Shown: one piece after another, positions 11,317-56,292 of the stretch
Layout: every line of letters starts with the position of its first letter
Numbering within the stretch: the stretch's first letter is position 1
Assembly (NCBI RefSeq): GCF_006345805.1
Contig: NC_042997.1
Span: 44,702,001-44,766,000 of the forward strand
Direction: 5' to 3'
Origin: Octopus sinensis
Taxonomy: Eukaryota
Length of the DNA: 64,000 nucleotides
Translations under genes and position numbers: made by a program
The notes under the pieces: generated by a model
Seen by the model: the letters and a program-made list of their open reading frames with translations, nothing else
Told to the model about the DNA's origin: nothing
Databases searched by the model: none

Positions 11317-11437
11317 TCTGTTCTTGTATATGTGACGAGTGTCTGTAGAGACGGGTCGTCTGCAGTGGCTTCTTTATACTCTTTTAATTTAGTGTCGGTT
11401 ATGGGGTAATTTTTTATTACTGCATGAATGTGCGATT

Positions 11438-13215: not shown

Positions 13216-13242
13216 TTCGAGTGCATGTGTATCGTCATCTGA

Positions 13243-21185: not shown

Positions 21186-21591
21186 CACTACCACCACCAC
21201 CTCCCAGCAATCAGGTCTGAAGAGGCTCTTCAAAAAAAAAAAAAATCAAAGGTATTTTGACTTTTTAAAAAATGTAATGGATTCCCTTATGAAAAATAAC
21301 CAGAGTTTGCCACTTTAGAGACACTAAATAATTCAATTAAAAAACAGTTTATATTCAGTCTAAAAGCACTTACAATTCTCAACGGAATTGTAGCTACTTT
21401 TGGGAAAACAGAGAAAAGGGAAACAACTCCTGAGAATGTATGTATGTATGTATGTATGTATGTATGTATGTATGTATGTATGTATGTATGTATGCATGTA
21501 TGTATGTATGTATGTACAGTAAATTTAGGGTGAATACTTGATAAGTGTAAGCACCTGTGTATGCCAGATAGTGGCAGAGGTGAGAGAGAAT

Positions 21592-26269: not shown

Positions 26270-26801
26270 GATGACTGGCGTTCGTGCTAGCGGGGCGCAA
26301 AGAGCACCATATGAGTGTGATCGTTGACAGAGCGGCTAACCGGCTTCCGTGCCAGTGGCACATAAAAGGCACCATTCGAGTGTGATCGTTACCAGCGTCG
26401 TCTTACTGGCACTCGAACCCCGTGCTAGTAGGGTGTTAAGAGCACCATCCGAGCGTGATCGTTGCCAGAGCGGCTATCTGGCCTCCGTGCCGGTGGCACG
26501 TAAAACACACCATTCGAGCGTGATCGTTACCAGCATCGCCTTACTGGCACCTCTGCCGGTGGCATGTGTAAAAGATTCGAGCGAGGTCGTTGCCAGTACT
26601 GCCTGACTGGCCCCGTGCCGGTGGCACGTAAAAGCACCCACTACACTCTCGGAGTGGTTGGCGTTAGGAAGGGCATTCAGCTGTAGAAACTTTGCCAGAT
26701 CAAGATTGAAGCTTGGTGCAGCCATCTGGTTCGCCAACCCTCAGTCAAATCGTCCAACCCATGCTAGCATGGAAGGCGGACGTTAAACGATGATGATGAT
26801 G
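26270..26801 (+). mobile_element. Retroposon 3' cassette (family D) with internal tandem units and a (GAT)n tail
   Basis: Repeated GCACCATTCGAGCGTGATCGTT and GTGCCGGTGGCAC modules, then GGCGTTAGGAAGGGCAT..CGTTAAACGATGATGATG. A short-repeat tail of this kind suggests an RTE-type LINE end or an RTE-mobilised SINE. Confidence 0.7.
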
Positions 26802-27239
26802 AATATAATTATTATTGCAATATGCAATAATTCATGGCATCCAGCCATCTGGGTAGAACCTTCACTTGTTACCACTGACCCCCAGCATACACATAGATAT
26901 GAACATATAACAGTTTACAAAGCATTGCTTACCCATGCTTTTCAATTGAACTGAATTAAGCTTTGTAAGTGTTTGACGAAACATGCTTATTGGGAAATTT
27001 GTAAGTTCGAGTAAATTTCTTTTTTTAAGTATCACCATTCTAGGTATTTATAGTCCGGTGGAATTGAGAAATCAACTCGTAAATAAGCGAAACCTTCGAA
27101 TTCATCACTGTGCGTACACACACACACACACACACACAACACACACACACACACACTCACACTCTCACACACACACACACACACACACTCAGAGTCACAT
27201 ATCTATGTATGTATTTTATGTATGTTTGTAAATAATCAA

Positions 27240-29214: not shown

Positions 29215-30673
29215 ATGTCAGCTACCTACGCATCGAAACTGAGATCTGCAAGTAGGGCTTCTCATCAAGATGATGGTCCTACCAATAGTCATCTCAACGA
29301 GCAGTTGCTGTTGCTCAAACAAGAGGTTGAGCACCTAAAGTCTGTTGTTGCTCTCTTACTGAATAAACAGTCTCCTGTTGACGCAGAGTCACCCTTGATT
29401 TCTTCCCTGGAGACGTCCAAACCGAAGGGAACAAAATCGAAGCGGCCAAAGAAGGCGAAGGAACCGGCGGTCGTTTCTGCACATGATCGTTCCCGTGCGG
29501 ATTCTTCCTCATCTGCCTTTTCGGTCCCGGAGGTTCCCCAACCTAATTTGAGGAGCGTAGACTCAAACCCACCTGAAGACCGTTGTTCTCCCCAAAAGAG
29601 GAAACGTCGTCAAAACTCCAGTGGGGCGGATTTAGCTATGAAACCTGACCACGATAAACGGTCTCCTGTTGACGCAGTCACCCTTGATTTCTTCCCTGGA
29701 GACGTCCAAACCGAAGGGAACAAAATCGAAGCGGCCAAAGAAGGCGAAGGAACCGGCGGTCGTTCCTGCACATGATCGTTCCTGTGCGGATTCTTCCTCA
29801 TCTGCCTTTTCGGTCCCAGAGGTTCCCCAACCTAGTTTGAGGAGCGTAGACTCAAACCCACCTGAAGACCGTTGTTCTCCCCAAAAGAAGAAACGTAGTC
29901 AAAACTCCAGAGGGGCAGATTTGGCTATGAAACCTGATCACGATAAAATCTGTTTGGATTCTCCTTCACTTGTCCTTCACATTAATGCCATTGCTCAACC
30001 AATTCTGAACGATCTCGATGTGAGTTCATCTGGGGAGTGGTGCTCCCCCAAACCGAAGAAGAGGCAGTGCAGTTCCAAACCAGGCGGGAAAATTATGACC
30101 ACTAAATCCATTCCGATCGACCCCACAGGCCGACATAAGTCCGATGGCTATGAAACCACCTTTTCGAAATCCTCCAATGAAGAATCGAATACCGCAGCTC
30201 ATAGTAGAGAACTTTTTGCCCACTCAAGATCAGCAATAATATATGGCAAAGCTGAATCCACCTGTGATACAGGCATGAACCGCCTAAAAGATGACATTAA
30301 TTTTGTTTCCATTTTGGTTGGAGAATTGTTCTCTGTGAACGAAAATGTCAGTGTTCTTAAGGTCGCTCGGCTAGGAAGATTCCAAGCGAACCCAACCGCA
30401 GATACTAGACCACGCCCAATAAGGGTAATCTTTTCTTCTGATCGGGAGGCTTCAGTCTTTCTGAACAGAGCTCAGACGCATGCCTGGGAGGACCCCAATA
30501 TGGGTTTTCGCGAGGAATACTCAATAAGAGAGAGAATTCGCCGGAGGAACCTGATATCCGAACTAAAGATGAGGAAACAAATGGGATAGAAGGGTTTACG
30601 AATCCAAGATGGACAGATAATCAAGTCCTACCTCTGGTCCCATGCTGTAGTGCTGACAGGGAAAGTGATGTGA
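29215..30673 (+). CDS. LINE ORF1 (coiled coil, S/K-rich duplicated region, RRM-like domain), disrupted
   Basis: LLLLKQEVEHLK coiled coil; IIYGKAES..VARLGRF..RPRPIRVIF RRM-like motifs; frameshift near 29677 and an in-frame TAG at 30587. Confidence 0.8.
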
Positions 30674-30685
30674 GGGCAAATCGAA

Positions 30686-33558
30686 GTGAAGTTGATACCC
30701 CCCGTCAACGATGCTATCTCTGATGCCCTTTATTCTGCTTGTTCCCCAACTCCCGCCCCTCAGACTTCACAGCTCAGCATCGTCTACACCAACTCGTGCT
30801 CCTTATTCCCAAAGTTCAGTGAACTATTTACACTGGCCATACGTGACTCCCCTGATGTGATAGCTATCACCGAGACTTGGCTGACTCCAGCAGTAAAGGA
30901 CTCAGAAATCCACCTGCAGGGCTACGTCCTTTTCAGATGTGACAGAGGAAAAAGGCGAAGTGGAAGTGTTGTTGTGTATGTTAAGTCTGAGCACAAACCG
31001 TCCTGCGGTATTCTACCCACAAATGCTCAACCTACAACAAAATTCGATGCCGTCTATTGCAAGCTGAGCCTATCTGAGTTTTGCCTGCCCGTGTTGGCTG
31101 TCTACAGGCCGCCTCTAGCCAACCCCCAGGACGATGCTCATCTACTCGAAGCGATAAGATTCGTTTCAGCTTCGCATGACTGCTTGGTACTAGGCGACTT
31201 CAACGCTCCCACGATCGATTGGCCCGCATCAATTTGTACAACATCTTCCCGGTTCGGCCAGGCCCTTCTTGACGTGGCTGAAGATTGTTTTCTATCGCAA
31301 CATGTTGAATATCCGACAAGGCATCGGTTTGGGCAGCAGCCATCTATGCTAGATCTGGTATTCTCCCGCTATCCAAGATCAGTGTCAGACGTATCTGTGT
31401 GCGCCCCTCTTGCCAAGAGTGATCATGCGGTCCTGAAGTTCGTCATGCACACACTTTTTCTACACCCACGATTACTTCGCTGCCACGTAGAGTCTTCTCT
31501 GCAATTAATCTTGAAATTCTAACTGAGGCTTCCGCGCTTCTGGACTGGCGATCCCTGATGACGTTGTCCTCAGTTGACGAACTATGGTCATCCCTCAAAG
31601 CATATGTAATCTGTTTGACTGACCAGGCAGTTCCCGTTGGGCTTTCCAAGAGGAAGAAACACAAGCCCTGGGTGACGAAGAAGGTTAAACGAGAACGTCG
31701 ACTCAGAGATATTGCTTGGGCTGAATTCAAAAATCTGGATTCGACTGCAGCTTTTGAGGTGTACAAAACTCAACGAGACCGAGCCGTGAAAATTGGAAAG
31801 AAAGAACGCTTCAGTTATGAATACAAAATCGCGGCAAATGCCAGTAGCAATCCAAAAACCTTCTTTGCCCATGTCCAGCGGAATTCCCGCTTGAACAACC
31901 AGATTGCAACGTTGGTAGACTCAACAGGCGTATCGATTGAGGACCCTTATCAACAGAGTCAATTATTTGCCGAGGCTTTTTCAACTATTTTCAAACAAGA
32001 TGATGGTCGTGAACCCCCTCCATTTGATAGATCGGTACCTCCAATGCTTCGATTGGTCATCACGCGGGACGAAGTCAAACGTGTTATTCAAGGCCTCGAT
32101 GTCAACAAGGGTCACGGCCCTGACGGCATACACCCACGGGTTATCAAAGCGTTGGCTCCGGTCATCTGCGAGCCCTTAACACGACTATTCAATATGTCAT
32201 TGGCGACGGGTGTTATACCTGCAGACTGGAGAACAGCGATAATCTGCCCAATTTTCAAGAAAGGGAGCCGCGAAGACCCGCTTAACTACCGACCGGTTTC
32301 CCTTACATCAATAATCAGCAAGATGTTCGAAACCATCCTTAAGAAAAGTATGATGCTCCACCTCCTAAACACAGCCTCGATCACTGATTCCCAACACGGC
32401 TTCGTGCCGAAGAGATCATGCTTGACCAACTTACTAGTAATGGAAGAATTGGTGACGCGCATCCTCGATGATAGTGATGCTGTTGACATCGTTTTATTGG
32501 ACTTTGCCAAAGCTTTTGATTCGGTAAACCACCGCCTACTACTTGTCAAGCTTCAAGCATATAGTTTCCATCTGGATATTGTACGATGGGTTGGTGCCTT
32601 CCTCTCAGATCGCTCCTTCCAAGTTCAAGTTAATGGTTCGCGGTCCGACGTCTCCAGTGCGAGCAGTGGCGTGCCTCAAGGTTCAGTGCTTGGGCCCTTG
32701 TTGTTCTTAGTCTTCATAAATGACTTGCCCGACGACCTCACGCAACACACCCTTCTATTTGCCGACGATATCAAACTGGTCGCTCCTCGCGGTAGTATAG
32801 AGGATCTTCGTCGATGCCTCCACCAAATTTGGAAGTGGTCTAACGATTGGGACCTGTGTCTGAACGTGTCAAACTACTGTCATCTGCCTGTCGGCTCTAC
32901 TCCTGCAACTCAGCTTGATTTCGAGCCGGGTCGTCTGCTGCTGGAGAGGACCGATCAGGTAAAGGACCTGGGTATCTTGGTGGATTCCTCCTTTTCGCCT
33001 TCGGCCCAGTGCGTCCATGCTGCCAACAAAGCGCGCGGAATTCTGTTTTTGATTCGACGGTCATTCGGAATGCTCACAGCAGCCATATTCCTACCACTCT
33101 ATGTCACGCTGGTGAGACCCATATTGGAGTATGGGATTCAAGCCTCTTCTCCTTATCTCCTCAAAGACATACAGCATCTCGAAAGAGTCCAGAGGCTGGC
33201 TACCCGCATGGTTCATGGTCTCAAAAATTTGTCCTACGAAGAAAGGCTGAGGACGCTCGACCTTTATTCTCTTGAAAAACGCCGCCGCCGTGGTGATCTC
33301 ATTCTCGCCCACAACATCATAAGCGGGAAGTGTAACCTCTCGAAAGAGCTGTTCTTCACTCCTGCTCCGGAGCGTCGGCTGCGGGGTCATTCCGAAAAGT
33401 TCTACCTGCGACGATTTCATCTCAATCGAAGGAGAGGAGCTTTCTCCGTCCGGGTTGCGGATCTGTGGAACAAGCTGCCAGACGAGATAGTGAAGATGCC
33501 GACGACCGCTTTGTTCAAAGCCTCCCTGGACCTCAAGTGGCCTGAACTCTTTACATGA
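30686..33558 (+). CDS. LINE ORF2 (APE endonuclease and reverse transcriptase), one frameshift near 31465
   Basis: VYTNSCSL, ITETWL, YRPP, GDFNAP, LDLVF, SDH (endonuclease); NYRPVSLTS, LDFAKAFD, GVPQGSVLGP, FADD, RRRGDLI, LRGH (RT and C-terminus). Confidence 0.92.
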
Positions 33559-38226: not shown

Positions 38227-38543
38227 GTGGAGGCGCAATGGTCCAGTGGTTAAGGCAGCGAACTCGTATTCGGAGGATCGCGGTTTCGATTCCCAGACCG
38301 GGCGTTGTGTGTGTTTATTGAGCGAAAACACCTAAAGCTCCACGAGGCTCCGGCACGGGGTGGTGGCGACCCCTGTTGTACTCTTTCGCTCCAACTTTCT
38401 CTCACTCTCTCTTGTTTCTTGAGTAACGCTGCGATGGACTGGAGTCCCGTCCAGCTGGGCTGGAACACATGCGCCACAGAAACCGGGAAAACGGGCCCTT
38501 GGGCCTGGCTAGGCTTGAAAAGGGCGCATAAATAAATAAATAA
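38227..38543 (+). mobile_element. tRNA-derived SINE family C, alternative 3' half
   Basis: GTGGAGGCGCAATGG..GGTTTCGATTCCC head; 3' half GCGATGGACTGG..GTCCAG..AGAAACCGGG and an (TAAA)n tail differ from the other C copies. Confidence 0.8.
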
Positions 38544-39019: not shown

Positions 39020-39116
39020 CCATACTGATGTTCACATCGTTGAATTTTTTAATTTCTGAATCTTTAAAAAAAAATTTTGAAATTTTCTTTTTTTTCTTTA
39101 TAAGTTTTGCTGTGGT

Positions 39117-39302
39117 TTAAGTTTTCGTAATTGCGCAGTTTCTATATATTGGGAGGAGATATTTACCTCCTAAATTTTTATCGTGCATTTAATTGTGTTG
39201 TTGCAATAAAAGGTATGCTTACATATTCGAGTAGTCAGGGAGAAAAGAAAGGTAAAATGTTTACAGAAGGTCGTTGATATTAAAGTTTTTCAGTTTTGTA
39301 AA
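39117..39302 (-). repeat. Dispersed repeat family E fragment
   Basis: Reverse complement of ~48467-48652; related pieces at ~28205-28280 and ~57705-57790. Confidence 0.65.
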
Positions 39303-39493
39303 GTTGATTGTTCGGGTACTTGTCAATTGCCGTGGTCCCGGTTTTGCACACGCGAATTCGCGCGCGCGCGCGCGTCAGACGTAGGTACTCGATACTCGAG
39401 ATCCTACGAGGTGACTTGCGCATGCGCAGTGCAGAATTCGCGCGTGCGCGTTAAACCCCCCCCCTAAAAAAAAGGTGTTGGATTTCACTAAAA

Positions 39494-39536
<43 letters not shown>

Positions 39537-39828
39537 ACATTTTCAATTTTACACAAAAAAATTACATAGTCGCTTTCCTCGCGGATTTACAGAGAAATGA
39601 ATTAATTACTATTTTACAGAATAAAATTAATGAATTAATTATATAAATTAAATAATTCTTGAAAATTAATTAATATTAATAATATTTTTTGAACAAAGTA
39701 AATAATTTATAAAACTTGGTTAATAATTTTTTTTACACAAACGCGAACGCGAACGTATATAATTTGTGAAACTTTTTTTTTTTTTACAGACGTATATAAT
39801 TTGGTAAACTTAATGAATTAATTTCTTC

Positions 39829-40250
39829 TCATCATCATCATCGTTTAACGTCCGTTCTCCATGCCAGCATGGGTTGGACGGTTCGACCGGGGATCTGGGA
39901 AGCCAGAAGGCTGCACCAGACTCCAGTCTTATCTGGCAATGTTTCTACAGCTGGATGCCCTTCCTAACGCCAACCACTCCGAGAGTGTAGTGGGTGCTTT
40001 TTACATGCCACCCGCACAGGTGCCAGGCGAGGCTGGCAACGGCCACGGTCGGATTGGTGCCAGTCGAGGCGGCTCTGGCATCGGCCACGATTCGGATAGT
40101 GCTTTTTACGTACCACCAGTCCAGGGGTCCTGGCATTTGCCGGGTGCCACACTTGCCCCAACATGTCTTCGCAAGCAAAGGGGGTTGGCATGGGTGCCTG
40201 TCGTGGGATGAGGTTCGATATCAACTTCGCTTGCCTCAACAGGTCTTTGT
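39829..40250 (-). mobile_element. Family D retroposon cassette inside the left arm
   Basis: CATCATCATC tail plus homology to 26620-26801. Confidence 0.8.
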
Positions 40251-40688
40251 GTATAAATGTATAAATTTTTCGCACTAAATTCTTTCCGTAGAATTTATCA
40301 AAAAACGCGCAAAATTATTCCGTAGACTTTATCAAATTAAAAAACGCAAAATTAATATATTTTTTGAAATTGCAAATTATTTAGAATATAAAACAAATTA
40401 AGTTAAATTTTAAAAATAAATGTCATATACTTATACTCTGTAAGGTGCTGTGTTCACACTTCAATTTACTATTTTCTAGAAATGTTGCTTTTCTAATTGA
40501 AACAATTTTTCTCAATCTCCATTTAAAAGTCCATAATGCCTCTTGAGCCATATCAAAATGAACAACTTTGAATTACCCGGTGGTGGTGGTGGTGTGAGGT
40601 TCTAATTTTTTTTCTGATCTCTCTTTGCCCCCCCCCCTAGATGGAGGTGTGGTGGGGAGACAGATGAAAGATGTTTCATTCTCTACTA

Positions 40689-40719
<31 letters not shown>

Positions 40720-41298
40720 TTCTTAAACCTACACGATATAGTCTATAAATTTGGGATGTTTTTGAAAGATAATATATTTTGTCATCAGAATATATATACT
40801 TTCTCACACTACAATTAAGATATATTTATTTTAAATCGTTCATCTTTTCCCGCGACAACAAAAATTGGGCGCGAAAATTTTTCTAAATATTAGCTGAATG
40901 AACAACTGAGATAAAGAGGGGGCAAAGAGAGATCAGAAAAAAAATTAGAACCTCACACCACCACCACCACCGGGTAATTCAAAGTTGTTCATTTTGATAT
41001 GGCTCAAGAGGCATTATGGACTTTTAAATGGAGATTGAGAAAAATTGTTTCAATTAGAAAAGCAACATTTCTAGAAAATAGTAAATTGAAGTGTGAACAC
41101 AGCACCTTACAGAGTATAAGTATATGACATTTATTTTTAAAATTTAACTTAATTTGTTTTATATTCTAAATAATTTGCAATTTCAAAAAATATATTAATT
41201 TTGCGTTTTTTAATTTGATAAAGTCTACGGAATAATTTTGCGCGTTTTTTGATAAATTCTACGGAAAGAATTTAGTGCGAAAAATTTATACATTTATA

Positions 41299-41720
41299 CA
41301 CAAAGACCTGTTGAGGCAAGCGAAGTTGATATCGAACCTCATCCCACGACAGGCACCCATGCCAACCCCCTTTGCTTGCGAAGACATGTTGGGGCAAGTG
41401 TGGCACCCGGCAAATGCCAGGACCCCTGGACTGGTGGTACGTAAAAAGCACTATCCGAATCGTGGCCGATGCCAGAGCCGCCTCGACTGGCACCAATCCG
41501 ACCGTGGCCGTTGCCAGCCTCGCCTGGCACCTGTGCGGGTGGCATGTAAAAAGCACCCACTACACTCTCGGAGTGGTTGGCGTTAGGAAGGGCATCCAGC
41601 TGTAGAAACATTGCCAGATAAGACTGGAGTCTGGTGCAGCCTTCTGGCTTCCCAGATCCCCGGTCGAACCGTCCAACCCATGCTGGCATGGAGAACGGAC
41701 GTTAAACGATGATGATGATG
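41299..41720 (+). mobile_element. Family D retroposon cassette inside the right arm
   Basis: Mirror copy of 39829-40250; the six-frame ORF translations of the two copies are identical. Confidence 0.8.
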
Positions 41721-42012
41721 AGAAGAAATTAATTCATTAAGTTTACCAAATTATATACGTCTGTAAAAAAAAAAAAGTTTCACAAATTATATACGTTCGC
41801 GTTCGCGTTTGTGTAAAAAAAATTATTAACCAAGTTTTATAAATTATTTACTTTGTTCAAAAAATATTATTAATATTAATTAATTTTCAAGAATTATTTA
41901 ATTTATATAATTAATTCATTAATTTTATTCTGTAAAATAGTAATTAATTCATTTCTCTGTAAATCCGCGAGGAAAGCGACTATGTAATTTTTTTGTGTAA
42001 AATTGAAAATGT

Positions 42013-42053
<41 letters not shown>

Positions 42054-42606
42054 TTTTAGTGAAATCCAACACCTTTTTTTTTAGGGGGGGGGTTTAACGC
42101 GCACGCGCGAATTCTGCACTGCGCATGCGCAAGTCACCTCGTAGGATCTCGAGTATCGAGTACCTACGTCTGACGCGCGCGCGCGCGCGAATTCGCGTGT
42201 GCAAAACCGGGACCACGGCAATTGACAAGTACCGATTGTTCGTATGTCCGATCAGAGAAACTGTAGTATTTTTAGAATAAAAAGGATGTGTTCATTTCCA
42301 TTATTCAGACTAACGATTCTACCAGATTATTGCCTTGCCGTCATATAATATAATAAAACAATATATTGAATAATTAACAATGCGTCGAATAGCTATTCGA
42401 TTCATTAGTAGTCATTCACATAGCTGACTATCCTCTTGAAAAGCTCCATCAATTTCTGGCATCGTGTCTATGTTAGAAATCATTAATATCAATCCAAGAG
42501 AGAATACGCGGTGTTAACGCTCTATTTCAGTCTACAGGGATTATATTCATCTTTCGGGCAATCAGAGCCACGTGTGCTTTCATAATCAATCTATCTGTAT
42601 TAAATA

Positions 42607-43203
42607 CTAGCAGTATCACCCGGCGTTGCTCGGGTTTGTAAGGGAAATAACTATATAAGCATTTTTAGAGAGTTATAGCCAAAAACTAGCAAAAAAACGC
42701 ATTAAAATGGAAAAAAAAATGATGGTAAATTTTTTAAAAATCGTTGATTCATCGTAGACATTTTTAGAGAGTTACTTCCCTTATATAATAGCGAAAAAAT
42801 GCATTAAAATGGAAAAAAATGATGGTAAATTTTTTTAAAAATCGTTGATTCATCGTAGACATTTTTAGAGAGTTACTTCCCTTATATAATAGCGAAAAAA
42901 TGCATTAAAATGGAAAAAAATGATGGTAAATTTTTTTAAAAATCGTTGACTCATCGTAGACATTTTTAGAGAGTTACTTCCCTTATATAATAGCGAAAAA
43001 ATGCATTAAAATGGAAAAAATGATGGTAAATTTTTTTTTAAATCGTAGACTCATCATAGACGCGTGCTAATACACAGAAGGGCTCGATATGAATCACGAC
43101 TATAAGATACCCGGTTTTGGTTAAACTGCACCGCAAAATGTGGGAGTAGTTAGGAATCTAAATCGTAGGAGACAGACACACAACTTCAGTTTTATATATA
43201 AAG

Positions 43204-43850: not shown

Positions 43851-44236
43851 GATGGAAGCACTCCGTCGGTTACGACGATGAGGGTTCCGGTTGATCCGAA
43901 TCAACGGAACAGCCTGCTTCGTGAAATTAACGTGTAAGTGGCTGATCACTCCACAGACACGTGTACCCTTAATGTAGTTCTCGGGGATATTCAGCGTGAC
44001 ACAGAGAGTGACAAGGCCGGCCCCTTGAAATACAGGTACAACAGAAACAGGAAGTAAGAGTGAGAGAAAGTTGTGGTGAAAGAATGCAGCAGGGATCACT
44101 ATCATCCCCTGCCGGAGCCTCGTGGAGCTTTAGGTGTTTTCGCTCAATAAACACTCACAACGCCCGGTCTGGGAATCGAAACCGCGATCCTATGACCGCG
44201 AGTCCGCTGCCCTAACCACTGGGCCATTGCGCCTCC
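43851..44236 (-). mobile_element. SINE family C (full length)
   Basis: Reverse complement of 45306-45692. Confidence 0.85.
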
Positions 44237-44914
44237 TCTCAAAATTTATATATAACCACAATAAAGTCCGTAAGCATGTGAGTTCATGGTCCAACATTTC
44301 TAAATGTTATACACACATACGTATATCTCTTCAAACTGAACATTGACCGTATGAACATAAATCGTACCAAATATTTTTTGACTCTTCAAAAATTGCACAG
44401 CTGTTATATGGAAGGCTAACTCTTTTATAGAGAGACAAGTCTGGAATTTATCTTTTTTTAAGCCATAAACTGGTGAAAATTACATTACTTTTTTTTTGAA
44501 TGAACTTCATTGTTGAAAGGTACTAATTTAGATATTGCTATCGTTTATTTAGCAGAAGAGGTGGTGGTGCAATTTTTATTAACTAATTTCTTTTCTCCGT
44601 TACTTAGCCCATCTGTAACGCTTTCACATGATTAGTTGAAGGGAAGGTGAAGAGCGACAGAAAAAGGGGAGAGAAAAAGAGGGTAAGGCGAAGAGTGAGA
44701 ATGAAAGAGGGAGAGTGCTGTGTATTAAAGTCTATAAAATTGTGCATAAAATAAAGTGTATATATAAAATGCATTAAGTAATCATTGTATTCCAATTTTC
44801 TTCACTTTTCAATGATTAGCAGATGTATCTTTTGATACAGACATAACACAGGCTACGCTCTCAGGTGTTTTGGATAAAGTTTTCATAATTAACCCAATAA
44901 GTTTATCATTAATT

Positions 44915-44941: not shown

Positions 44942-45305
44942 TGTAATATAAATGTGTATAACGTGAAGCTAGGTAAATTCACATTTTTAAAAATTGTGAA
45001 TAAGAAATTTACAATAAATATTTGCAGAGTGAAGTTTAGATAAACACTAGAGATTTGAATTCATTTCTGTTGGTTGTTTTAAGGGGTTCCTCAGACAATA
45101 GGCTGTTTATGAAATTTTACATAGTTGTACGAAATCTGAGTTACCATATTCCTGCATTGGAAAATACCAAAAGTCTATTGTTTAGGTAGCTATTAAGTTC
45201 GTGACGGTATTTCTGTTTGCTTACTTCTATTTCAAGTTTCTTGCATAAGGAGGAAATTTATCACGCATTTCTTGTGTGTGTATATGTATGTGTTTGTGTG
45301 TGTCA

Positions 45306-45691
45306 GTGGAGGCGCAATGACCCAGTGGTTAGGGCAGCGGACTCGCGGTCATAGGATCGCGGTTTCGATTCCCAGACCGGGCGTTGTGAGTGTTTATTGA
45401 GCGGAAACACCTGAAGCTCCACGAGGCTCCGGCAGGGGATGGCGGTGATCCCTGTTGTACTCTTTCACCACAACTTTCTCTCACTCTTACTTCCTGTTTC
45501 TGTTGTACCTGTATTTCAAGGGGCCGGCCTTGTCACTCTCTGTGTCACGCTGAATATCCCCGAGAACTACGTTAAGGGTACACGTGTCTGTGGAGTGCTC
45601 AGCCACTTACACGTTAATTTCACGAGCAGGCTGTTCCGTTGATTCGGATCAACCGGAACCCTCGTCGTCGTAACCGACGGAGTGCTTCCAT

Positions 45692-45692
<1 letters not shown>
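45306..45692 (+). mobile_element. SINE family C (full length)
   Basis: tRNA-like head with A/B boxes; followed by (TG)n. Confidence 0.85.
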
Positions 45693-46736: not shown

Positions 46737-46875
46737 AGATTAAAAAAAAAAATTACCATCATTTTTTCCACATTTTTAATGCATTTTTTTGCTATTTTTT
46801 TGGCTATAACTCTCTAAAAATGCTCATATAGTTATTTCCCTTACAAACCCGAGCAACGCCGGCCGATACTGCTAG
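46737..46875 (+). mobile_element. Helitron 3' fragment
   Basis: Same hairpin and CTAG^T end as 3512. Confidence 0.7.
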
Positions 46876-46914
46876 TAATATATAAATTTTACTCTAGAAG
46901 TGGATTGTATAAGC

Positions 46915-47268
46915 CAGTGGTTCTTAACTTGGGGAGCGTCAGCAATTTCCAAGGGGGATGGAGCGAGCCCTTGAGAAAAAAAACCCAGAAATTTCTCTAA
47001 TTATATTTGTTAGTCTCTTAACGAGAGCATGGTCAAATAATGAGAAGTTTATGAAAAAATGCAAAAGTATCGCCTTATAACTTTAGCTTTCTTCTTCTAC
47101 TACCTTAGCGTCACTTACCATTTTCAGTACTTATTGCCTCCCCACCCACCCACTTCGTATCCCTCAAAACCCTCACTAATTCTCAACTGTAGCGTTAACA
47201 TTTACCTTTATTTGGTAATTTTTTTTTGTTTTTGTTTTTTGTTACAAGACTCAGGTTAAGAACTACTG
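46915..47268. mobile_element. hAT (Charlie-like) MITE
   Basis: TIRs CAGTGGTTCTTAAC / GTTAAGAACTACTG; 8-bp TSD GTATAAGC (46907-46914) versus GTATAAAGC after the element. Confidence 0.75.
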
Positions 47269-47518
47269 GTATAAAGCTTAGATATTATTATCGTGTAAAG
47301 ACAACCATCTTTTTCAGTTAATAGATTATAAACAAGTTTGATCCACAGTTTTCATATATATGAAATAATGTGATTCTTAAAAATCAAGAGACCTGCTGAA
47401 ACATTATCAAATCATTATAGTAACATACTAAGAAATATTAACTTAATTTTAAAAATTGAAAACTATTTTTAAATTATAGCAAGATGAAAAGTACGATATA
47501 TTTAAAAATAGGAAATAA

Positions 47519-47614
47519 ACCTATTTCTTTACTACCCACAAGGGGCTAAACACAGAGAGAACAAACAAGGACAGACAAACGGATTAAGTCGATTATATCG
47601 ACCCCAGTGCGTAA
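47519..47614 (-). mobile_element. SINE B 3' fragment
   Basis: Reverse B tail. Confidence 0.75.
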
Positions 47615-47920
47615 ACCAAAGAGTATGTAATAGGTTCTACTATAAAGACTCAAAAAAGAATTAAAACAGATTGGAAACATTTTTTAAAATAACAATAAAA
47701 ACCAAAATTTTTAATATTAAATGATTATGTTAAAAATATAGTAAATTTTTTTGTAATAAGAAATTATAATATAAAGCCAAATGTTAAACTAAAATTCAGA
47801 TTTAAATATTACAGAAAGTACTAGGTAAAACTAAAAGCTATGCAAAATCTTTTCATTTTTTAAGAAACCGTTTTTATATTTTCGTACAAATAAATACAAT
47901 ATTTTATTGTACAAAACTCT

Positions 47921-48012
47921 GCCAGATCAGAATGGAGCCTGGTGCAGCTTCCTGGCTTCCCAGACCCCAGTCGATCCGTCCAACCCATGCTAGCATGGAA
48001 AACAGACGTTAA

Positions 48013-48043
<31 letters not shown>

Positions 48044-48693: not shown

Positions 48694-49021
48694 AACAGGC
48701 TAGGATGTACATCCCCTTGTGGGCAATAAAGAAACAGGCTAGGATGTACATCCCCTTGTGGGCAATAAAGAAACAGGCTAGGATGTACATCCCCTTGTGG
48801 GCAATAAAGAAACAGGCTAGGATGTACATCCCCTTGTGGGCAATAAAGAAACAGGCTAGGATGTACATCCCCTTGTGGGCAATAAAGAAACAGGCTAGGA
48901 TGTACATCCCCTTGTGGGCAATAAAGAAACAGGCTAGGATGTACATCCCCTTGTGGGCAATAAAGAAACAGGCTAGGATGTACATCCCCTTGTGGGCAAT
49001 AAAGAAACAGGCTAGGATGTA
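48694..49021. repeat. Perfect 39-bp tandem array, ~8.4 units
   Basis: Unit ACAGGCTAGGATGTACATCCCCTTGTGGGCAATAAAGAA with no variant units and no spacers. Confidence 0.95.
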
Positions 49022-49461
49022 TATATTATATTGTGTTACAGCTTCCAAAATATATCATAAATTTTTAAAAATTATTTCGTTTTTGGATTTGGTTTGCAAG
49101 ATTCTTTATATGAGTTGGTGTGTTGAAGCATATTCTGTTGTGTCTGGGGAGAGTCATTCTCTTTTTGTGCCTTATCACTGGTAAAATTTCCACTTATTTC
49201 TTATTTTCTTGCAACCTTTTCAATAGTCTTGACTGTCCCTTATTTACACTGCGTTCCCTTTTGTTTGTTCGTGCGTACGTGTGGGGGTCAGTGTGTGTGT
49301 GTGAGTGTGAGTGTTCCTATACATGCATGCATGTACGTATGTATATATGTGTATGCATATATGTATGTATGTGTGTGCATCTGTGTGTATGTATGTATCC
49401 TGCGTATTTATGTGCTTGCATGTCTGTTTGCGTATTTTCTATGTATGTGTGTGTGTGCGCA

Positions 49462-49544: not shown

Positions 49545-51746
49545 TCACAGCTCTTCATGGCAGCGAATGCAGACGACATTGGAATGTTTGTTCTTGGCAA
49601 ACATGGAGATTACAATTCTTACATGTAGTACGAGTTTTCCTGTTTTGGGTGGGGGCACACAAAGAACATCTTCCTTTTTTTCTTTGGCTGAGGAATCTCA
49701 AAATGAGGTTGACGTTTGTGTTCTTTTCTTGTTTGGTTGAGAAATGTTAGCGGAACTAGAAGACTGTTTGTCTTGTTCTTGTTTAGCATTAACTCCAGCA
49801 AGTTCCTTTCCTAACTGAATTAGGTTCTCACTTCTTTTATCTTTGAAACTTTGCAAGTGAATCTGTTTAGCAACAATGAAAACATTCACTGCACTTATAT
49901 CAGTCATGTTGTAGAATATAACCACATGCCATCTTCGAGTCATTCTTTTGCAAGTGTATGTCCTTACCATCTTATCTAGGGTATCTACTCCTCCTTTTGT
50001 TTTGTTGTAACATGTAGTAACTTCAAGTTTCTTTTCAGCACTTTTTGAATCAATCGAAGGCTGAGAGTGCATTGTACTCATAAATATGACGACATAATTT
50101 TTCTTGGGACAATAAGATAGGATCATAGAATCCTTTCGAAATCCAAATATTGTGTTGTTGATTTCTTTTCCATTTGTGGAAGCACTTGGAAGTTCAACTC
50201 TGTTCTTTCTAATTGTTCCACCTAAAACAGTTTTCTTGCTAAGCAGCTCTCGAGCCAATCCTAGACTTGTAAAAAAATTATCACAAGTTATATTGCGACC
50301 AATAATTTCAAGTTCTTTTACTAGGTCTCCCCCACCCTTTACTGGGTCTTTTCTAGTGTAGATTTGCATTTTCCAGGTATAAGATGTTTCACTATCACAT
50401 GTTGCCCAAATTTTAATTCTATATTTCCCTAGTTTTGAAGGAATATATACCCAGAGTGGACAATGTCCTCTGAATGAAACTAATTGTTCATCAACTGTCA
50501 TGCATGAACTTGGAGCATATCCATCTTGCAAATTATGATTCCACATTTCAAATACTTCTCTTATGGACTCCAATTTATCATCACTTCTCTTTTTTTCTTC
50601 TTGCACTAGCATCATCAAAACATAATACTTGTAAAATCTGTTGAAATCTTCCCCAGCTCATAATTTTGTTGAATATTAGGCGGCCATCTTCTTGACTCCA
50701 TAACTGTGTGACATTTTCATGTTTAGATTTATAAAAACCAATAAGAATGATCAGTCCAATAAATTTCTTTAGCTCAGAGTGATCAATTTCCTAAACAACC
50801 TGACCTTCAACATTTGTCCATTTACGAATTACTTCAAGAAGATTCCGGCGCATAAAGATAGTAAAACACGCTTCAATGCTATCGCAAAACCTTTTAGCAA
50901 AGTGGGATGGTCCACATTCTTGGCGCACAGTATTCCAAGATGAAGTTCTTACTGCTGCTTGAGTAAGAGGATTAGAATGCCAAACATCTTGTCTGTCTCT
51001 AGAAACATATTGCTCATTCATAATTGTGTTTATCTTCGTCTGATGACACAGAACCCAAACTGTCCAGCATGCAACCACTTTCACCATTATTTTCAGAGCA
51101 ATGGAAGGAATCACTATCCTCTTCACTTTCTTCATCGAATTTTAATAACCTTTTCGATATTTGGTCTTCACGCAAGTTTTCACGTCTAGGCATATTGGAA
51201 AGCACCACTGAACTATATGAAACTTGATAGCAGACTAAAGGCAGATATTGCTCTCCCACATAGTTATACTCTCCTGAAAGTTGATGCATTATATTGTAAG
51301 AATTACGTCATTACATAGAAATATTGCATCACCCCATAACCTAGCAGATTGAAGGTGATGCATTACCACACAAATTTACAGGAATATTTTCATAATTTTC
51401 CCTATTTTCTCTGAAATTCAGCAAATAGATTGAATACAATTTTATCTATTTTATATCCGATAAATAGCTAGGAAAATAATATTTTATACTGCTTTTATTC
51501 TGTTTAGAATGACAAGAGTATTGTCTGAATCTAATTCGAGAGTCCAATGGACCCCTACGGTAATTAATGTAGAAAGTGAAATTTTCTAACTTTTATAATC
51601 ATATGGAAAATTTCCCATTTGACAAATAAAAAAAAGAGTCGAGAAAAAAATAAGTATCACAAGAAATCAGCAGAATCAAATAATATAAACAGTAGGAAAA
51701 AGCAACTGAAAACCTGAAATGGGTCCATTGAACCCATTTCAGAAGG
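49545..51746 (-). mobile_element. Decayed piggyBac (PGBD4-like) element with one end
   Basis: DEQLVSFRG, DNFFTS and YNKTKGGVD DDD motifs; acidic N-terminus; frameshifted Cys-rich C-terminus (CSLC..TTCKNC..HVC..H..VCIRC); GG|TTAA terminus at 51746-51750; other end not found. Confidence 0.85.
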
Positions 51747-52893: not shown

Positions 52894-55425
52894 CTAACCA
52901 TCCAGCTCCCAACAGTTGTTTTCTATGTATGGAACTTCACTGGAAATGGTGTCCCAAAAACCTGACAAAGAGAAGACGTCTGTTATTACGAAATCGCTTT
53001 CATTTTCGATACTTGATGTTTCAATTGTAGGGGCAGAGATTGTAAAGCAATCATTAACCTCTTTATTAGAGTTAAATGTTGAACTATCGTTCATAACACA
53101 AAACGGTTCATAATAACGATTGCTGTTACTGACAAGGTCGAAATTATCATTTCTGTCATATATCAAAGATGACTGTATGATGTTAGGCAATTCAGAATCC
53201 TCATTTGCTTGTAATATTTCAAAACCATCGCTATCAATACTGTTTAATATATTAAACGAATGGTTTGGCAATGTATGAATTTTAATAAAACAGTTGTCTG
53301 ATGATAATGATGTAGCAGCATAAGGACTGGAATTTCTGATATGATGCTTGCAGTTAATGCATTCTGTATAACCTTTAAGGAAATCAATCAAACCATCAGA
53401 TTTATAGTGAATATAATTATACGTATGATTATCTGCATTATTTTTCTCATTCAATTGGCAATCATTGCTGCAAGTTTTGTGACAGGTTTTCAGTTTCTTT
53501 TTGCAAGGTTTTGTTGAAACAGTTTTCAGCGTTCTCGTTGCCTCTTTGGAATTCCTTGTTCGATGACGTCTGCATTCTGTAGAATTTTTATACGTTTTGC
53601 TAGTGTCTGTCTTGGAAGCTGAAAAAGTAGCTTGGCATATTTTGTGTCGAGAAACATTACGAACGTTCAATAATTTCTCATTCAGACTTTTTATCTTTTC
53701 ATGTTTTACGTTATCAAACACTTCATCTGTCGGAATATTTTTATCAGAGAGATTTTGATCTTTTGATAAAATCCGAGTTCTTGACACACCGTGTAAATTT
53801 CTATGTTCTAACGCATTTAAATTATTCCTACGGTTTATCGGTTTCTTTGTTTTTGCTTTATTCCTTTGCACACCGTCTACGTTTTCGGCAAATAATTTGC
53901 TTGGACAAGAAAAACGATTATTTTGTTTAGGGATGTCACTTACTTTTTTCCTGTATTTGGATTTTGATTTCTTGTCTTTTCCTTGTGCAACCATCTTTTT
54001 ATCTGCTGTTGTCGATTTTTGCAAGGCCTTGTAATTTCTCTCCACTAGTTTCTTTGAAACTGGTTTTGCCGTTTTAGTCCATAAATCGGGTAGAGCACTT
54101 TTCACTTGCTGAACACCACAAGAGTAGATGTTCTTTACAGGACTCTCTTTAAATAATTGCGTAACTTTAACGGATTTTGATTCTTCCAGATAGTGTGACG
54201 GACATATATTTCGTACTGGTAATATCGATTCAAAACTACATCCGCTCTCCGGGTGTGCTTTTCCATTTAATTCCGGTATTTTGTTACATCTGAAGTCTGT
54301 ATGAAAACATTGCTTCGTCTCTTTCAGAGAATTAATTTTTTCCCTGGTGTTGTAAGATTCACTCATTGTTTCATCCTTGTCGCGTTTTGACTGACTTTCA
54401 ATATTTAAAGATTCCTGATCGATATTTTCATCAGGTTGATTAAGAAATTGAGCGTCTTGAAATGATCTCACCTCGTCTTGGGAAATCAAATTTGTTCCAT
54501 TGCTTGCAACAGATAGCTTCATATCTACTTCCAAAGAACTGACAGGTTTATTCATTCTGTCTAAAGCGTTTGCATCAAACGGAAGAGTATATGCAATGCT
54601 ACAGTTTGGCAACTGCAAATTATACAGATTAAATGAATCACCCGAATTAAATTCTTTATTTAAAATGCTATTTGGAATATCTGTCATTGGTATTGGATTC
54701 GTAGAACCACAAGTTTCGCCTATTTCTGTCGAATTATCATTAACTCTCTCTGATTTGGACAAGTTTAGTGGCAGAGAATTTGGTTCATGCAAGATATTTT
54801 CAAAATTTCTTTCGTTGAGGAACGAGTCTCTTTTGGTTAATTCTTTATCGTGAGAATAAACATTCGAATTATAAGATACTGTGTTACGATCATCACAAAT
54901 TAACAATTGCTCGGCCTGCAGTGGAATACCTTTTTCGTTTAGACTACAGGTGTATCTGAATTCAGAAGGAATCTCATTATTCCTCATAGAATAAAAATCC
55001 CATCCACTTGGTTTTGAATCATTATGAGAAAATATCACTGAAGAACTTGTTGGGCATAATTCATTCAAATGGGATTCTTTCATAAGAGGCACAGAATCTT
55101 TAACCTCCAAATCTCCAGATTGCTCATAAGAAATATGAACTTGACTGGATGTCTGAGTGTCTTGAACAGACGGGTAGCCAGTAATTAAAGGGACGGGGTC
55201 CACTAAAAACATAGCGAACTTGTTATTGGCAACTGCTTCATTTGGAAAACTCAGATTAATTCCTTGCGGAAAAGAGTTAAAAACATAACTGTTCGGCATT
55301 ATATTCAACATATCACAGGAATTAGAATCAGTTCCAATGTGTTCTAAGTTTTTAGTATAATAATCAAAGAGAACTTGTCGATCATCAACCATACTTAAAT
55401 TGTTGGTAACAAAACTTACACTCAT
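52894..55425 (-). CDS. Uncharacterised 843-aa single-exon ORF (probable lineage-specific host gene exon)
   Basis: 2.5 kb stop-free frame in AT-rich DNA with no transposon motifs. The ATG at 55425 directly follows a polypyrimidine tract and AG (TTTTACTATTTTTCAG|ATG). Ser/Asn-rich with a Lys/Arg-rich central block. No domain recognised. Confidence 0.7.
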   Translation of the reverse strand: MSVSFVTNNLSMVDDRQVLFDYYTKNLEHIGTDSNSCDMLNIMPNSYVFNSFPQGINLSFPNEAVANNKFAMFLVDPVPLITGYPSVQDTQTSSQVHISYEQSGDLEVKDSVPLMKESHLNELCPTSSSVIFSHNDSKPSGWDFYSMRNNEIPSEFRYTCSLNEKGIPLQAEQLLICDDRNTVSYNSNVYSHDKELTKRDSFLNERNFENILHEPNSLPLNLSKSERVNDNSTEIGETCGSTNPIPMTDIPNSILNKEFNSGDSFNLYNLQLPNCSIAYTLPFDANALDRMNKPVSSLEVDMKLSVASNGTNLISQDEVRSFQDAQFLNQPDENIDQESLNIESQSKRDKDETMSESYNTREKINSLKETKQCFHTDFRCNKIPELNGKAHPESGCSFESILPVRNICPSHYLEESKSVKVTQLFKESPVKNIYSCGVQQVKSALPDLWTKTAKPVSKKLVERNYKALQKSTTADKKMVAQGKDKKSKSKYRKKVSDIPKQNNRFSCPSKLFAENVDGVQRNKAKTKKPINRRNNLNALEHRNLHGVSRTRILSKDQNLSDKNIPTDEVFDNVKHEKIKSLNEKLLNVRNVSRHKICQATFSASKTDTSKTYKNSTECRRHRTRNSKEATRTLKTVSTKPCKKKLKTCHKTCSNDCQLNEKNNADNHTYNYIHYKSDGLIDFLKGYTECINCKHHIRNSSPYAATSLSSDNCFIKIHTLPNHSFNILNSIDSDGFEILQANEDSELPNIIQSSLIYDRNDNFDLVSNSNRYYEPFCVMNDSSTFNSNKEVNDCFTISAPTIETSSIENESDFVITDVFSLSGFWDTISSEVPYIENNCWELDG

Positions 55426-56292
55426 CTGAAAAATAGTAAAACGTTTAAAAATTAATTTTTTAAAATTACAAATCATTCAAATGCTTTTCTTTATTCTTCA
55501 GATTTAAGTATACCAACAACCAGAAATTTGTCGGACATACACGATTAAACAGCAGTATTTTACTCCTATTTCATTTTTGTCAAAAGAATAAGTGTAAAGA
55601 CGACCCCGGTGAAGTAGGAACTTAGAAAGCAAAGAGCCAGAATAAATATAGCAAAGCGTTTTGTCTAAATCTCAATATAGCACAGCTTACCGTTTTAAAT
55701 AACACAGCTTATATAATTCGACTATTAAAAAGACTGGAATATCCTTGATCCCAAGATTTATTCGACTAGGATTGACCTGAAGAGAAGTAAAAAGAAAAAT
55801 AGAACTAGTAAAATTCTTCGAAGACATTTAACTTGAAGGTAGAAAATATAAAACTCAGTTATAGCTTATTCTGAAACAGCATTGATTTGCTCCAAGTCTG
55901 CTCAGATAAACAGACCCATGGCATGCTGCCCAATCACTCAAACATCTAGGTATGGATCACAAAAGAATCGATTTCCCACCGTTCGACCGGTGTTCCAGGT
56001 GCATCTACTCCACCTTACAAAAAATCTGTGAATCATAAACATTTACATTACGTAGTAATAAAAGTAGCAGCAACCTATAACATATGTAAGAGCGTAAATT
56101 CAATTTCTTTAAATAGCAGCGAATTTCGAAAATTCTTTATAGTAGTCACGTAACTATTGGGATTTGAACTATAAGTTAATTCGTCATGTAACGTGTTAAA
56201 AAATAATACCGTAAAATGTATATTACTTGTCGACTAACTAAAATGTTTCTTGCAACTGAAGTTCAATTCCTGATTGTAGTTATTTCGCTTAC

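What the first reader, a model, noticed from the sequence alone, without database searches (positions are those of the whole stretch)
39306..42242. 2.9-kb fold-back transposon: ~1.32-kb near-identical arms and a perfect 9-bp TSD
Seen: 39315-40632 and 40918-42233 are reverse complements around a 285-bp spacer, flanked by GATTGTTCG on both sides. At the sites I checked, the arms differ only in homopolymer or dinucleotide length (C8/G9, T13/A12, (TG)13/(CA)12). There is no transposase. Known: long TIRs with 9-11 bp TSDs characterise Mutator/MULE (Foldback-type) elements. Inference: a young non-autonomous MULE-like family that is about 90% TIR. If transcribed it would form a >1.3 kb almost perfect hairpin, a strong ADAR/Dicer substrate in a lineage known for heavy A-to-I editing.
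Basis: partly seen in the sequence, partly recalled or inferred. Interest (0 to 1): 0.8.

Follow-up and report, generated by a model that had tools for sequence, protein, structure and literature searches.

The report
Foldback DNA transposon insertion in octopus
This is a real 2.9-kb non-coding "foldback" jumping-gene insertion in an octopus genome, with two almost identical 1.3-kb inverted arms and a perfect 9-bp target duplication; it is a clean example of a known kind of element, not a new kind.

Summary
Arms 39315-40632 and 40918-42233 are reverse complements with 0 substitutions and 3 slippage indels. They surround a 285-bp loop and are flanked by an exact GATTGTTCG on each side. The host is an octopus of the Octopus vulgaris group.

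The element has no coding capacity and no second copy in about 86 kb of octopus DNA I could read. I read it as a non-autonomous class II (TIR) transposon of foldback architecture, moved in trans by a DDE transposase that makes a 9-bp staggered cut.

Merlin elements also have 5'-GG termini and 8-9 bp TSDs. Foldback shape is polyphyletic; Galileo, a P-superfamily element, is one example. The arms are not built of tandem subrepeats as in Drosophila FB or nematode Tm1.

Each arm carries a copy of an independently dispersed SINE-like repeat. So the long arms arose by inverted duplication or conversion after that sequence was acquired.

"Young" and "family" are not shown. The empty-site and genome-wide copy tests could not be run: the reachable O. 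vulgaris locus stops short of the site. Transcription, editing and small RNAs are untested.

Verdict: new member of a known kind, modest interest.

The parts
39306..39314 (.). Left target-site duplication, GATTGTTCG
   Evidence: Exact 9-mer abutting the left arm and identical to 42234-42242.
39315..40632 (+). Left arm (long terminal inverted repeat), 1318 nt, beginning 5'-GGTACTTGTCAATTGCCGTGG
   Evidence: Reverse complement of 40918-42233, with 0 substitutions and 3 slippage indels.
39315..39456 (+). Terminal module: GC 59%, CpG observed/expected 1.86. It holds a local sub-palindrome, two GAATTCGCGCG motifs 80 nt apart, and the palindromic motif TGCGCATGCGCA at 39417-39428. It is the likely transposase-recognition end.
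   Evidence: D10; local fold -72.9 kcal/mol for the 171-nt stretch 39315-39485. The role as a binding site is inferred.
39829..40117 (+). Copy of an independently dispersed SINE-like repeat inside the left arm, beginning with (CAT)n
   Evidence: By BLAST, 39829-40054 matches window 26802-26575 at 84% and 39829-39944 matches 48028-47914 at 86%. Local alignments extend the first match to 39811-40117 vs 26822-26492 (75% over 335 columns). No tRNA or Rfam match.
40633..40917 (.). Unique 285-bp AT-rich loop with a (TA)16 microsatellite
   Evidence: It has no coding signal.
40918..42233 (-). Right arm, 1316 nt
41433..41721 (-). Mirror copy of the SINE-like repeat in the right arm
   Evidence: Lies inside the 859-nt stretch of 100% complementarity. 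Coordinates were mapped.
42092..42233 (-). Right terminal module, including TGCGCATGCGCA at 42120-42131
   Evidence: (I3, 159 nt at 100%).
42234..42242 (.). Right target-site duplication, GATTGTTCG

Best explanation
This is one insertion of a non-autonomous class II (terminal-inverted-repeat) transposon with foldback architecture, in a genome of the Octopus vulgaris group. Proposed mechanism: a DDE transposase encoded elsewhere binds the two identical CpG-rich terminal modules. It excises the 2919-bp unit and inserts it at a 9-bp staggered cut, and repair of that cut produced the two GATTGTTCG copies. A 9-bp stagger points most strongly to a Mutator-like (MULE/Phantom) enzyme. That group has many more recently active families in O. 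vulgaris than Merlin, the other superfamily that fits. The 1.3-kb arms are not an ancestral TIR. One half of a progenitor, already carrying a SINE-like repeat, was copied in inverted orientation over the other half, by template switching during gap repair or by arm-to-arm conversion. Only 285 bp was left unique. The arms are identical either because this happened recently or because conversion continues. Shown here: the anatomy, the TSD, the absence of coding capacity, the repeat copy in both arms and the host. Inferred: trans-mobilisation, which superfamily, and the order of events.
For: - The inverted arms and the 9-bp direct repeat are exact and end precisely.
- It is an outlier among inverted repeats in the window.
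- No Pfam domain is found in any arm or loop ORF.
- The only DDE transposase fragment in the window is piggyBac-type. piggyBac elements insert at TTAA (established knowledge), so it is not the partner.
- Each arm contains a repeat that also occurs independently at 26.5 kb and 47.9 kb of the window at 84-86% identity, while the two arm copies are 100% identical.
- The arms show 0 differences in 1316 bp (95% upper bound 0.23%), against 0.92% substitution divergence between the window and the O. vulgaris reference.
- 9-bp TSDs are typical of MULE/Phantom/Foldback elements (PMC3169594).
- O. vulgaris has 21 recently active Mutator families (115 insertions) against 2 Merlin families (11 insertions), plus 49 unclassified TIR families (PMC13282606).
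- Non-autonomous '2TIR' copies made almost wholly of TIR, and TIR growth by recruiting internal sequence, are documented for Galileo (PMC3573991).
Against: - Only one copy was seen, so mobility as a family is not demonstrated.
- No empty site could be obtained. The O. vulgaris locus I could fetch ends at about window 43.9-45.3 kb, and there is no paralogous empty site.
- No transposase with matching ends was found, and none could be searched for.
- A 5'-GG terminus with a 9-bp TSD fits Merlin equally well (PMC8101967).
- The arms lack the tandem subrepeats of classical FB and Tm1 elements.
- All three arm differences lie in homopolymer or dinucleotide runs. These could be consensus errors in the assembly rather than real mutations.
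Confidence: 0.6

Rival explanations
1. The same kind of element and mechanism, but a non-autonomous member of the Merlin superfamily, moved by an IS1016/IS1595-like DDE transposase.
For: Merlin elements have a conserved terminal 5'-GG and 8- or 9-bp TSDs (PMC8101967). This element starts with GG and has a 9-bp TSD. Merlin families have been recently active in O. vulgaris: 2 families and 11 insertions (PMC13282606).
Against: Reported Merlin TIRs are 24-462 bp, far shorter than 1.3 kb, although TIR length is a poor classifier. Merlin is about ten times rarer than Mutator among recent octopus insertions.
Confidence: 0.15
2. An ordinary short-TIR element inserted here and made the TSD, and only afterwards became a palindrome in situ, by intra-element inverted duplication or conversion. 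On this reading the 2.9-kb foldback has never transposed as such and there is no foldback family.
For: In-situ conversion would leave the TSD intact. Only one copy is seen. Both arms carry the same SINE-like copy, so a duplication or conversion step certainly took place at some point. TIR expansion by recruiting internal sequence is documented (PMC3573991).
Against: It needs two rare events at one locus. Nothing in the sequence separates it from transposition of an element that was already palindromic. 2TIR/foldback copies do transpose in other systems.
Confidence: 0.12
3. An assembly artefact: a chimeric palindromic long read (for example a missed hairpin adapter) or a mis-join produced the inverted duplication.
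For: The arms differ only in homopolymer or dinucleotide runs, as long-read consensus errors would. The local score is 15, reached by 1.6% of random 430-nt segments of the window.
Against: An artefact palindrome would keep mirroring into the flank. Here the flanks are unrelated to each other and carry an exact 9-bp direct repeat exactly at the arm ends. The loop is 285 bp of ordinary AT-rich sequence with a microsatellite, not a 45-nt adapter. The structure lies in the middle of a contig, with tens of kb of normal sequence on both sides.
Confidence: 0.05
4. The palindrome is, in addition, a functional hairpin-RNA locus: a source of endogenous siRNA or a hyper-edited ADAR substrate with a host role, transcribed from its CpG-rich ends or from a host transcript.
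For: Either strand is predicted to form a hairpin of about 1315 bp. A-to-I editing in metazoans mainly targets dsRNA formed by young repeats (PMC9989829). The terminal modules are CpG-rich and carry TGCGCATGCGCA, which by my recollection resembles an NRF1-type site.
Against: There are no expression data. It is a single locus with no evidence of conservation. Nothing here separates function from a by-product.
Confidence: 0.04

Closest known systems
Mutator/Phantom-type foldback elements (Drosophila FB; Tm1 of Meloidogyne)
   Same: They have 9-bp target-site duplications, long inverted termini, and many members with no coding capacity that are moved in trans (PMC3169594).
   Different: FB and Tm1 TIRs are composite arrays of 13-15 bp (or 10-31 bp) tandem motifs whose number varies between the two ends, with a mean TIR identity of about 93%. 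Here the arms are complex non-tandem sequence with a SINE-like insert and no substitutions between arms. No MULE/FLYWCH transposase partner is known for this element.
Galileo '2TIR' copies (P superfamily, Drosophila)
   Same: These are non-autonomous copies of 1.7-2.2 kb made almost entirely of TIR, with TIRs up to about 1.25 kb. Their TIRs lengthen by recruiting internal sequence in inverted orientation (PMC3573991). This is the closest structural analogue.
   Different: Galileo makes 7-bp TSDs, not 9-bp. The host phylum is different, and the longest Galileo TIR pair is 95% identical.
Merlin superfamily non-autonomous elements
   Same: Terminal 5'-GG and 8-9 bp TSDs (PMC8101967).
   Different: Described TIRs are 24-462 bp, and no IS1595-type transposase could be linked to this element.
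Inverted-repeat hairpin RNA sources and ADAR substrates formed by young repeats
   Same: A long, almost perfect intramolecular duplex is predicted for any transcript that crosses the element. Young repeats are the main editing substrate in metazoans (PMC9989829).
   Different: No transcription, editing or small RNA has been shown for this locus.

Membership tests
Class II TIR transposon (non-autonomous) | Terminal inverted repeats that end exactly at the element boundary | tested here: met
   The arms are exact from base 1, and the inverted repeat cannot be extended outward.
Class II TIR transposon (non-autonomous) | Target-site duplication of fixed length directly flanking the TIRs | tested here: met
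   GATTGTTCG on both sides, 9/9 identical.
Class II TIR transposon (non-autonomous) | Several dispersed copies with different flanks, and empty sites | not testable with these tools
   There is no other copy in the window or in 22.5 kb of O. vulgaris. No octopus genome could be searched as DNA. The metagenome scan found 0. Protein-based routes failed.
Mutator / MULE (including Phantom and Foldback) | TSD of about 9 bp (8-10) | tested here: met
   9 bp; criterion from PMC3169594.
Mutator / MULE (including Phantom and Foldback) | An autonomous relative with the same termini encodes a MULE DDE transposase | not testable with these tools
   No transposase lies in the element and no MULE domain was found among the 10 window ORFs of 198-860 aa scanned (of 17 ORFs of at least 150 aa). 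A genome-wide search was not possible.
Classical foldback structure (Drosophila FB, Tm1) | TIRs composed of tandem arrays of short subrepeats, variable in number between the ends | tested here: not met
   TRF finds only (TG)n and (TA)n microsatellites in the element. The arms are complex sequence and include a SINE-like copy.
Merlin | Terminal 5'-GG and an 8- or 9-bp TSD | tested here: met
   GGTAC... and 9 bp; criterion from PMC8101967.
Merlin | Partner with a DDE_Tnp_IS1595-type transposase | not testable with these tools
   Same limits as for MULE.
P superfamily / Galileo | 7-bp (7-8 bp) TSD | tested here: not met
   The TSD is 9 bp; Galileo's 7-bp value is from PMC3573991.
piggyBac (the only transposase fragment in the window) | TTAA target duplication | tested here: not met
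   The TSD is GATTGTTCG. The piggyBac domain lies at 49698-50618. The TTAA rule is established knowledge.
hAT | 8-bp TSD (established knowledge) | tested here: not met
   The TSD is 9 bp and cannot be read as 8 bp without breaking the inverted repeat.
Hairpin-RNA / ADAR substrate locus | Transcribed, with edited or diced products | not testable with these tools
   Only the in-silico fold is available.

The most novel reading that the evidence does not exclude
The element belongs to a foldback lineage with no transposase of a known superfamily, or is transcribed from its CpG-rich terminal modules as a lineage-specific long hairpin RNA. In the second case it would be an ADAR 'sponge' or endo-siRNA source with a host role in an animal with exceptionally heavy RNA editing.
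Probability: 0.06. Interest if true: 0.6.

Novelty: new member of a known kind. Interest (0 to 1): 0.3.

Why it matters
- If other copies exist, this is a clean, probably recent DNA-transposon insertion in an octopus genome. DNA transposons of several superfamilies are reported to be recently active in this group (PMC13282606).
- A presence/absence polymorphism at this site would be direct evidence of ongoing cut-and-paste activity.
- The SINE-like copy mirrored in both arms shows how long TIRs grow by inverted duplication. It also warns that automatic repeat annotation may split such an element into 'SINE' plus 'unknown'.
- A 1.3-kb perfect palindrome is a potential site of DNA fragility. If transcribed, it would be a strong dsRNA source in a lineage noted for A-to-I editing.
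- None of this is unexpected for a specialist.

Tried and rejected
**Empty-site test**
- I fetched the O. vulgaris orthologue through the neighbouring 860-aa ORF. The locus L001 is colinear with window 49.3-64 kb. It is then rearranged and ends near window 43.9-45.3 kb, short of the site.
- Further anchors failed. The LINE ORF has no homologue on record.
- A chimeric query of the piggyBac C-terminus plus flank and arm ORFs returned only distant piggyBac proteins.
- Exact look-ups of flank, arm and LINE ORFs and of the O. bimaculoides proteins found nothing.

**Paralogous empty site**
- The left flank 39116-39302 is a repeat with copies at window 48651-48468 and at L001 16586-16772. Similarity stops 3 bp before the TSD.
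- The continuation does not match the right flank better than shuffles do.

**Other copies**
- None were found by terminus search in the window or L001.
- An exact 24-mer scan of JGI metagenomes gave 0.
- A HMMER scan of 1.84 billion representative proteins with the arm ORFs gave only 2 marginal hits.

**RNA genes**
- Rfam gave only microsatellite-type miRNA false positives below the gathering score. No tRNA was found.

**Nested SINE with its own TSD**
- The far boundary of the SINE-like copy could not be fixed from the two other copies, and no clear TSD was found.

**Adapter artefact**
- There is only weak low-complexity similarity to the SMRTbell adapter. I rejected this as an explanation.

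**Literature**
- No paper in the library combines foldback elements with octopus. Papers on molluscs mention foldback elements only in passing.
Full report
**1. The observation**

The sequence at 39200-42350 and the repeat finder show three gapless blocks of inverted complementarity: 159 nt, 293 nt and 859 nt, at 99-100%. Together they form two arms, 39315-40632 and 40918-42233.

A global alignment of the left arm with the reverse complement of the right arm gives 1318 vs 1316 nt. There are no substitutions, and there are three indel sites, all in simple runs:
- A8 vs T9 at 39466.
- One TG unit at 39503-39504.
- T13 vs A12 at 39773.

That run is C9/G9, and the neighbouring A/T run is the one that differs.

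The loop is 285 bp (40633-40917), AT-rich, with a (TA)16 microsatellite. GATTGTTCG abuts both ends. Neither the inverted repeat nor the direct repeat can be extended by a single base. The chance of an exact flanking 9-mer is about 4e-6.

The 27-nt terminus occurs nowhere else in the window, with 0 expected from shuffles. The structure is by far the longest and most perfect inverted repeat in the 64 kb.

**2. Host and neighbourhood**

An 860-aa ORF at 52894-55476 (-) is 99% identical to an Octopus vulgaris hypothetical protein and 87% identical to O. bimaculoides LOC106880642.

The O. vulgaris locus L001 (OX597814.1) aligns to window 49.3-64 kb. Substitution divergence is 0.92% over 14.9 kb. 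So the window comes from the O. vulgaris species group.

The window is dense with transposable elements:
- Ty3/gypsy-type pol genes at 10.1-13.2 kb.
- A GIY-YIG (Penelope-type) ORF at 20.3-21.2 kb.
- A LINE with endonuclease and an intact 666-aa RT ORF at 30.7-33.6 kb.
- A second, frameshifted RT at 35.2-35.9 kb.
- A piggyBac-type DDE fragment at 49.7-50.6 kb.

None of these fits a 9-bp TSD element.

**3. Anatomy of the arm**

From the outside inward:
- A 142-nt CpG-rich terminal module (GC 59%, CpG o/e 1.86). It forms a local hairpin, carries two GAATTCGCGCG motifs 80 nt apart, and contains the palindrome TGCGCATGCGCA.
- C9, A8 and (TG)13 runs.
- 290 nt of 19% GC sequence with three 22-nt direct repeats.
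- A GC-rich segment at 39829-40117 that starts with (CAT)n. It is a copy of a dispersed repeat also present at window 26492-26822 and 47914-48028 (84-86% identity in the best blocks).
- A further 145 nt of GC-rich sequence found nowhere else in the window.
- 370 nt of AT-rich sequence with a 26-nt direct repeat.

The dispersed repeat has no tRNA or Rfam signature, so I call it SINE-like only. Unclassified SINEs are very abundant in O. vulgaris (PMC13282606).

No ORF of the arms or loop matches Pfam. Tandem Repeats Finder reports only microsatellites inside the element.

**4. What it is**

Exact TIRs, an exact TSD and no coding capacity together are the signature of a non-autonomous cut-and-paste transposon. 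With 90% of its length in the arms, it has foldback architecture.

The SINE-like copy is the most informative detail:
- It is 100% identical between the two arms.
- It is only 84-86% identical to its relatives elsewhere in the window.
- So the two arm copies are not independent insertions. One arm was copied onto the other after this sequence had been acquired.

The long arms are therefore a secondary inverted duplication or conversion tract, not an ancestral TIR. Galileo's non-autonomous '2TIR' copies lengthen their TIRs in the same way, by recruiting internal sequence (PMC3573991).

With 0 differences in 1316 bp, the 95% upper bound on arm divergence is 0.23%. That is about a quarter of the divergence between this genome and the O. 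vulgaris reference. So the arms last shared a template well after those two genomes separated, either through recent origin or through continuing conversion. The sequence alone cannot separate these two.

**5. Which superfamily**

- A 9-bp TSD is the usual product of MULE-domain transposases. It is shared by Drosophila FB and by the Phantom-type foldback family Tm1 (PMC3169594).
- The same paper stresses that FB-like structure is polyphyletic. [quoted passage not shown]
- Merlin elements are defined by a terminal 5'-GG and 8-9 bp TSDs (PMC8101967). This element meets both.
- hAT (8 bp), P/Galileo (7 bp) and piggyBac (TTAA) are excluded by the TSD.
- In O. vulgaris, recently active insertions include 21 Mutator families (115 insertions), 2 Merlin families (11 insertions) and 49 unclassified TIR families (871 insertions) (PMC13282606).

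On these priors I favour MULE over Merlin by roughly four to one. The defining test, a transposase-bearing copy with the same ends, could not be run.

In the strict structural sense the element is not an FB/Tm1-type foldback, because its arms are not tandem subrepeat arrays.

**6. What could not be done**

- The tools hold no searchable octopus genome DNA.
- The orthologous O. vulgaris stretch I could fetch ends about 1.6-6 kb short of the insertion site. It is also rearranged relative to the window beyond 48.3 kb.
- All other anchors and exact-protein look-ups failed.
- There is no paralogous empty site.
- There is no second copy in 86 kb of octopus DNA, none in JGI metagenomes, and no trace among predicted proteins.

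So 'family', 'young insertion' and 'empty site' remain predictions.

**7. Artefact check**

All arm differences lie in simple runs, as consensus errors would. The loop edges have weak similarity to the SMRTbell adapter, at a score reached by 1.6% of random segments.

A chimeric-read palindrome would keep mirroring into the flank and would have an adapter-sized centre. Here the flanks are unrelated to each other and the TSD sits exactly at the arm ends. The centre is 285 bp of ordinary sequence. I put the artefact at about 5%.

**8. Consequences**

Either strand, if transcribed across the element, is predicted to fold into one hairpin. It would have 1315 arm-to-arm pairs and an uninterrupted helix of 847 bp, at about -2520 kcal/mol. 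Young repeats that form such duplexes are the main A-to-I editing substrate across metazoans (PMC9989829).

Whether this locus is transcribed is unknown. The element lies 10.6 kb downstream of the nearest annotated coding sequence. The CpG-rich ends are only a hint of promoter potential.

**9. Verdict**

The interpretation as a non-autonomous, TSD-flanked foldback transposon is supported. The MULE label, the 'family' and the 'young' age are plausible but untested, and Merlin is a live alternative. This is a new member of a known kind, of modest interest.

Noticed in passing
window 39116-39302: The 187 bp just left of the insertion is a copy of a repeat also found at window 48651-48468 (95%) and at O. 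vulgaris L001 16586-16772 (97%). The repeat ends 3 bp before the TSD, so the element landed at the very edge of another repeat.
   Followed up: yes
window 42687-43061: A 101-bp tandem repeat (3.7 copies, 96% matches) lies 445 bp right of the element. Related units occur at about 3.1-3.5, 7.9-8.1, 16.1-16.2 and 46.7-46.9 kb of the window and in L001.
   Followed up: partly
window 43851-44265 / 45268-45692: A second inverted pair, about 415-425 nt and about 96% identical, with a 1-kb spacer and no TSD. It is probably two copies of a dispersed repeat in opposite orientation. A further copy lies at 38229-38413.
   Followed up: partly
window 45.3-48.4 kb vs L001 16.9-22.5 kb: The window and the O. 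vulgaris reference are not colinear here. Window 46744-47915 is inverted relative to O. vulgaris. About 2 kb of L001 (19000-20997) has no counterpart of at least 150 bp in the window. This is either a structural polymorphism or an assembly difference, a few kb from the palindrome.
   Followed up: partly
window 39417-39428 and 42120-42131: Each CpG-rich terminal module (GC 59%, CpG o/e 1.86) contains the palindrome TGCGCATGCGCA. By my recollection this resembles an NRF1-type site, so the ends may have promoter activity.
   Followed up: no
window 30686-33558 (+): A LINE with an endonuclease ORF (278 aa) and an intact 666-aa reverse-transcriptase ORF. It is preceded by two overlapping ORFs (29215-30589) that share a duplicated serine/proline-rich segment. 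It may be a young copy.
   Followed up: partly
window 10156-14123 (-): A Ty3/gypsy-type retrotransposon interior, with integrase, RT-RNase H, aspartic protease and gag-like ORFs in separate frames.
   Followed up: partly
window 20343-21233 (-): A 296-aa ORF with a weak GIY-YIG match (E 3.5e-4, 21.2 bits, just under the 22.6-bit cut-off), which suggests a Penelope-like element.
   Followed up: partly
window 48705-49184 (+): A 39-bp minisatellite that reads as an ORF repeating MYIPLWAIKKQAR eight times. The array length differs from O. vulgaris, where the region aligns at only 91%.
   Followed up: no
window 49698-50618 (-): A piggyBac-type transposase fragment (DDE_Tnp_1_7, E 6e-47). Its O. vulgaris orthologue, which carries an in-frame stop, is annotated as a spliced 259-aa gene.
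   Followed up: partly
window 52894-55476 (-): An 860-aa single-exon ORF with no Pfam domain. Homologues were found only in octopods: O. vulgaris 99%, O. bimaculoides 87%, and one Logan contig at 68%. It is an octopod-restricted protein of unknown function.
   Followed up: partly
window 8705-8885 / 8938-9118: A small hairpin-like inverted repeat, with 181-nt arms at 97% and a 52-nt spacer. It is built from a repeat that also occurs at about 4.0-4.2, 6.3-6.6 and 59.4-59.9 kb. No TSD was seen.
   Followed up: partly
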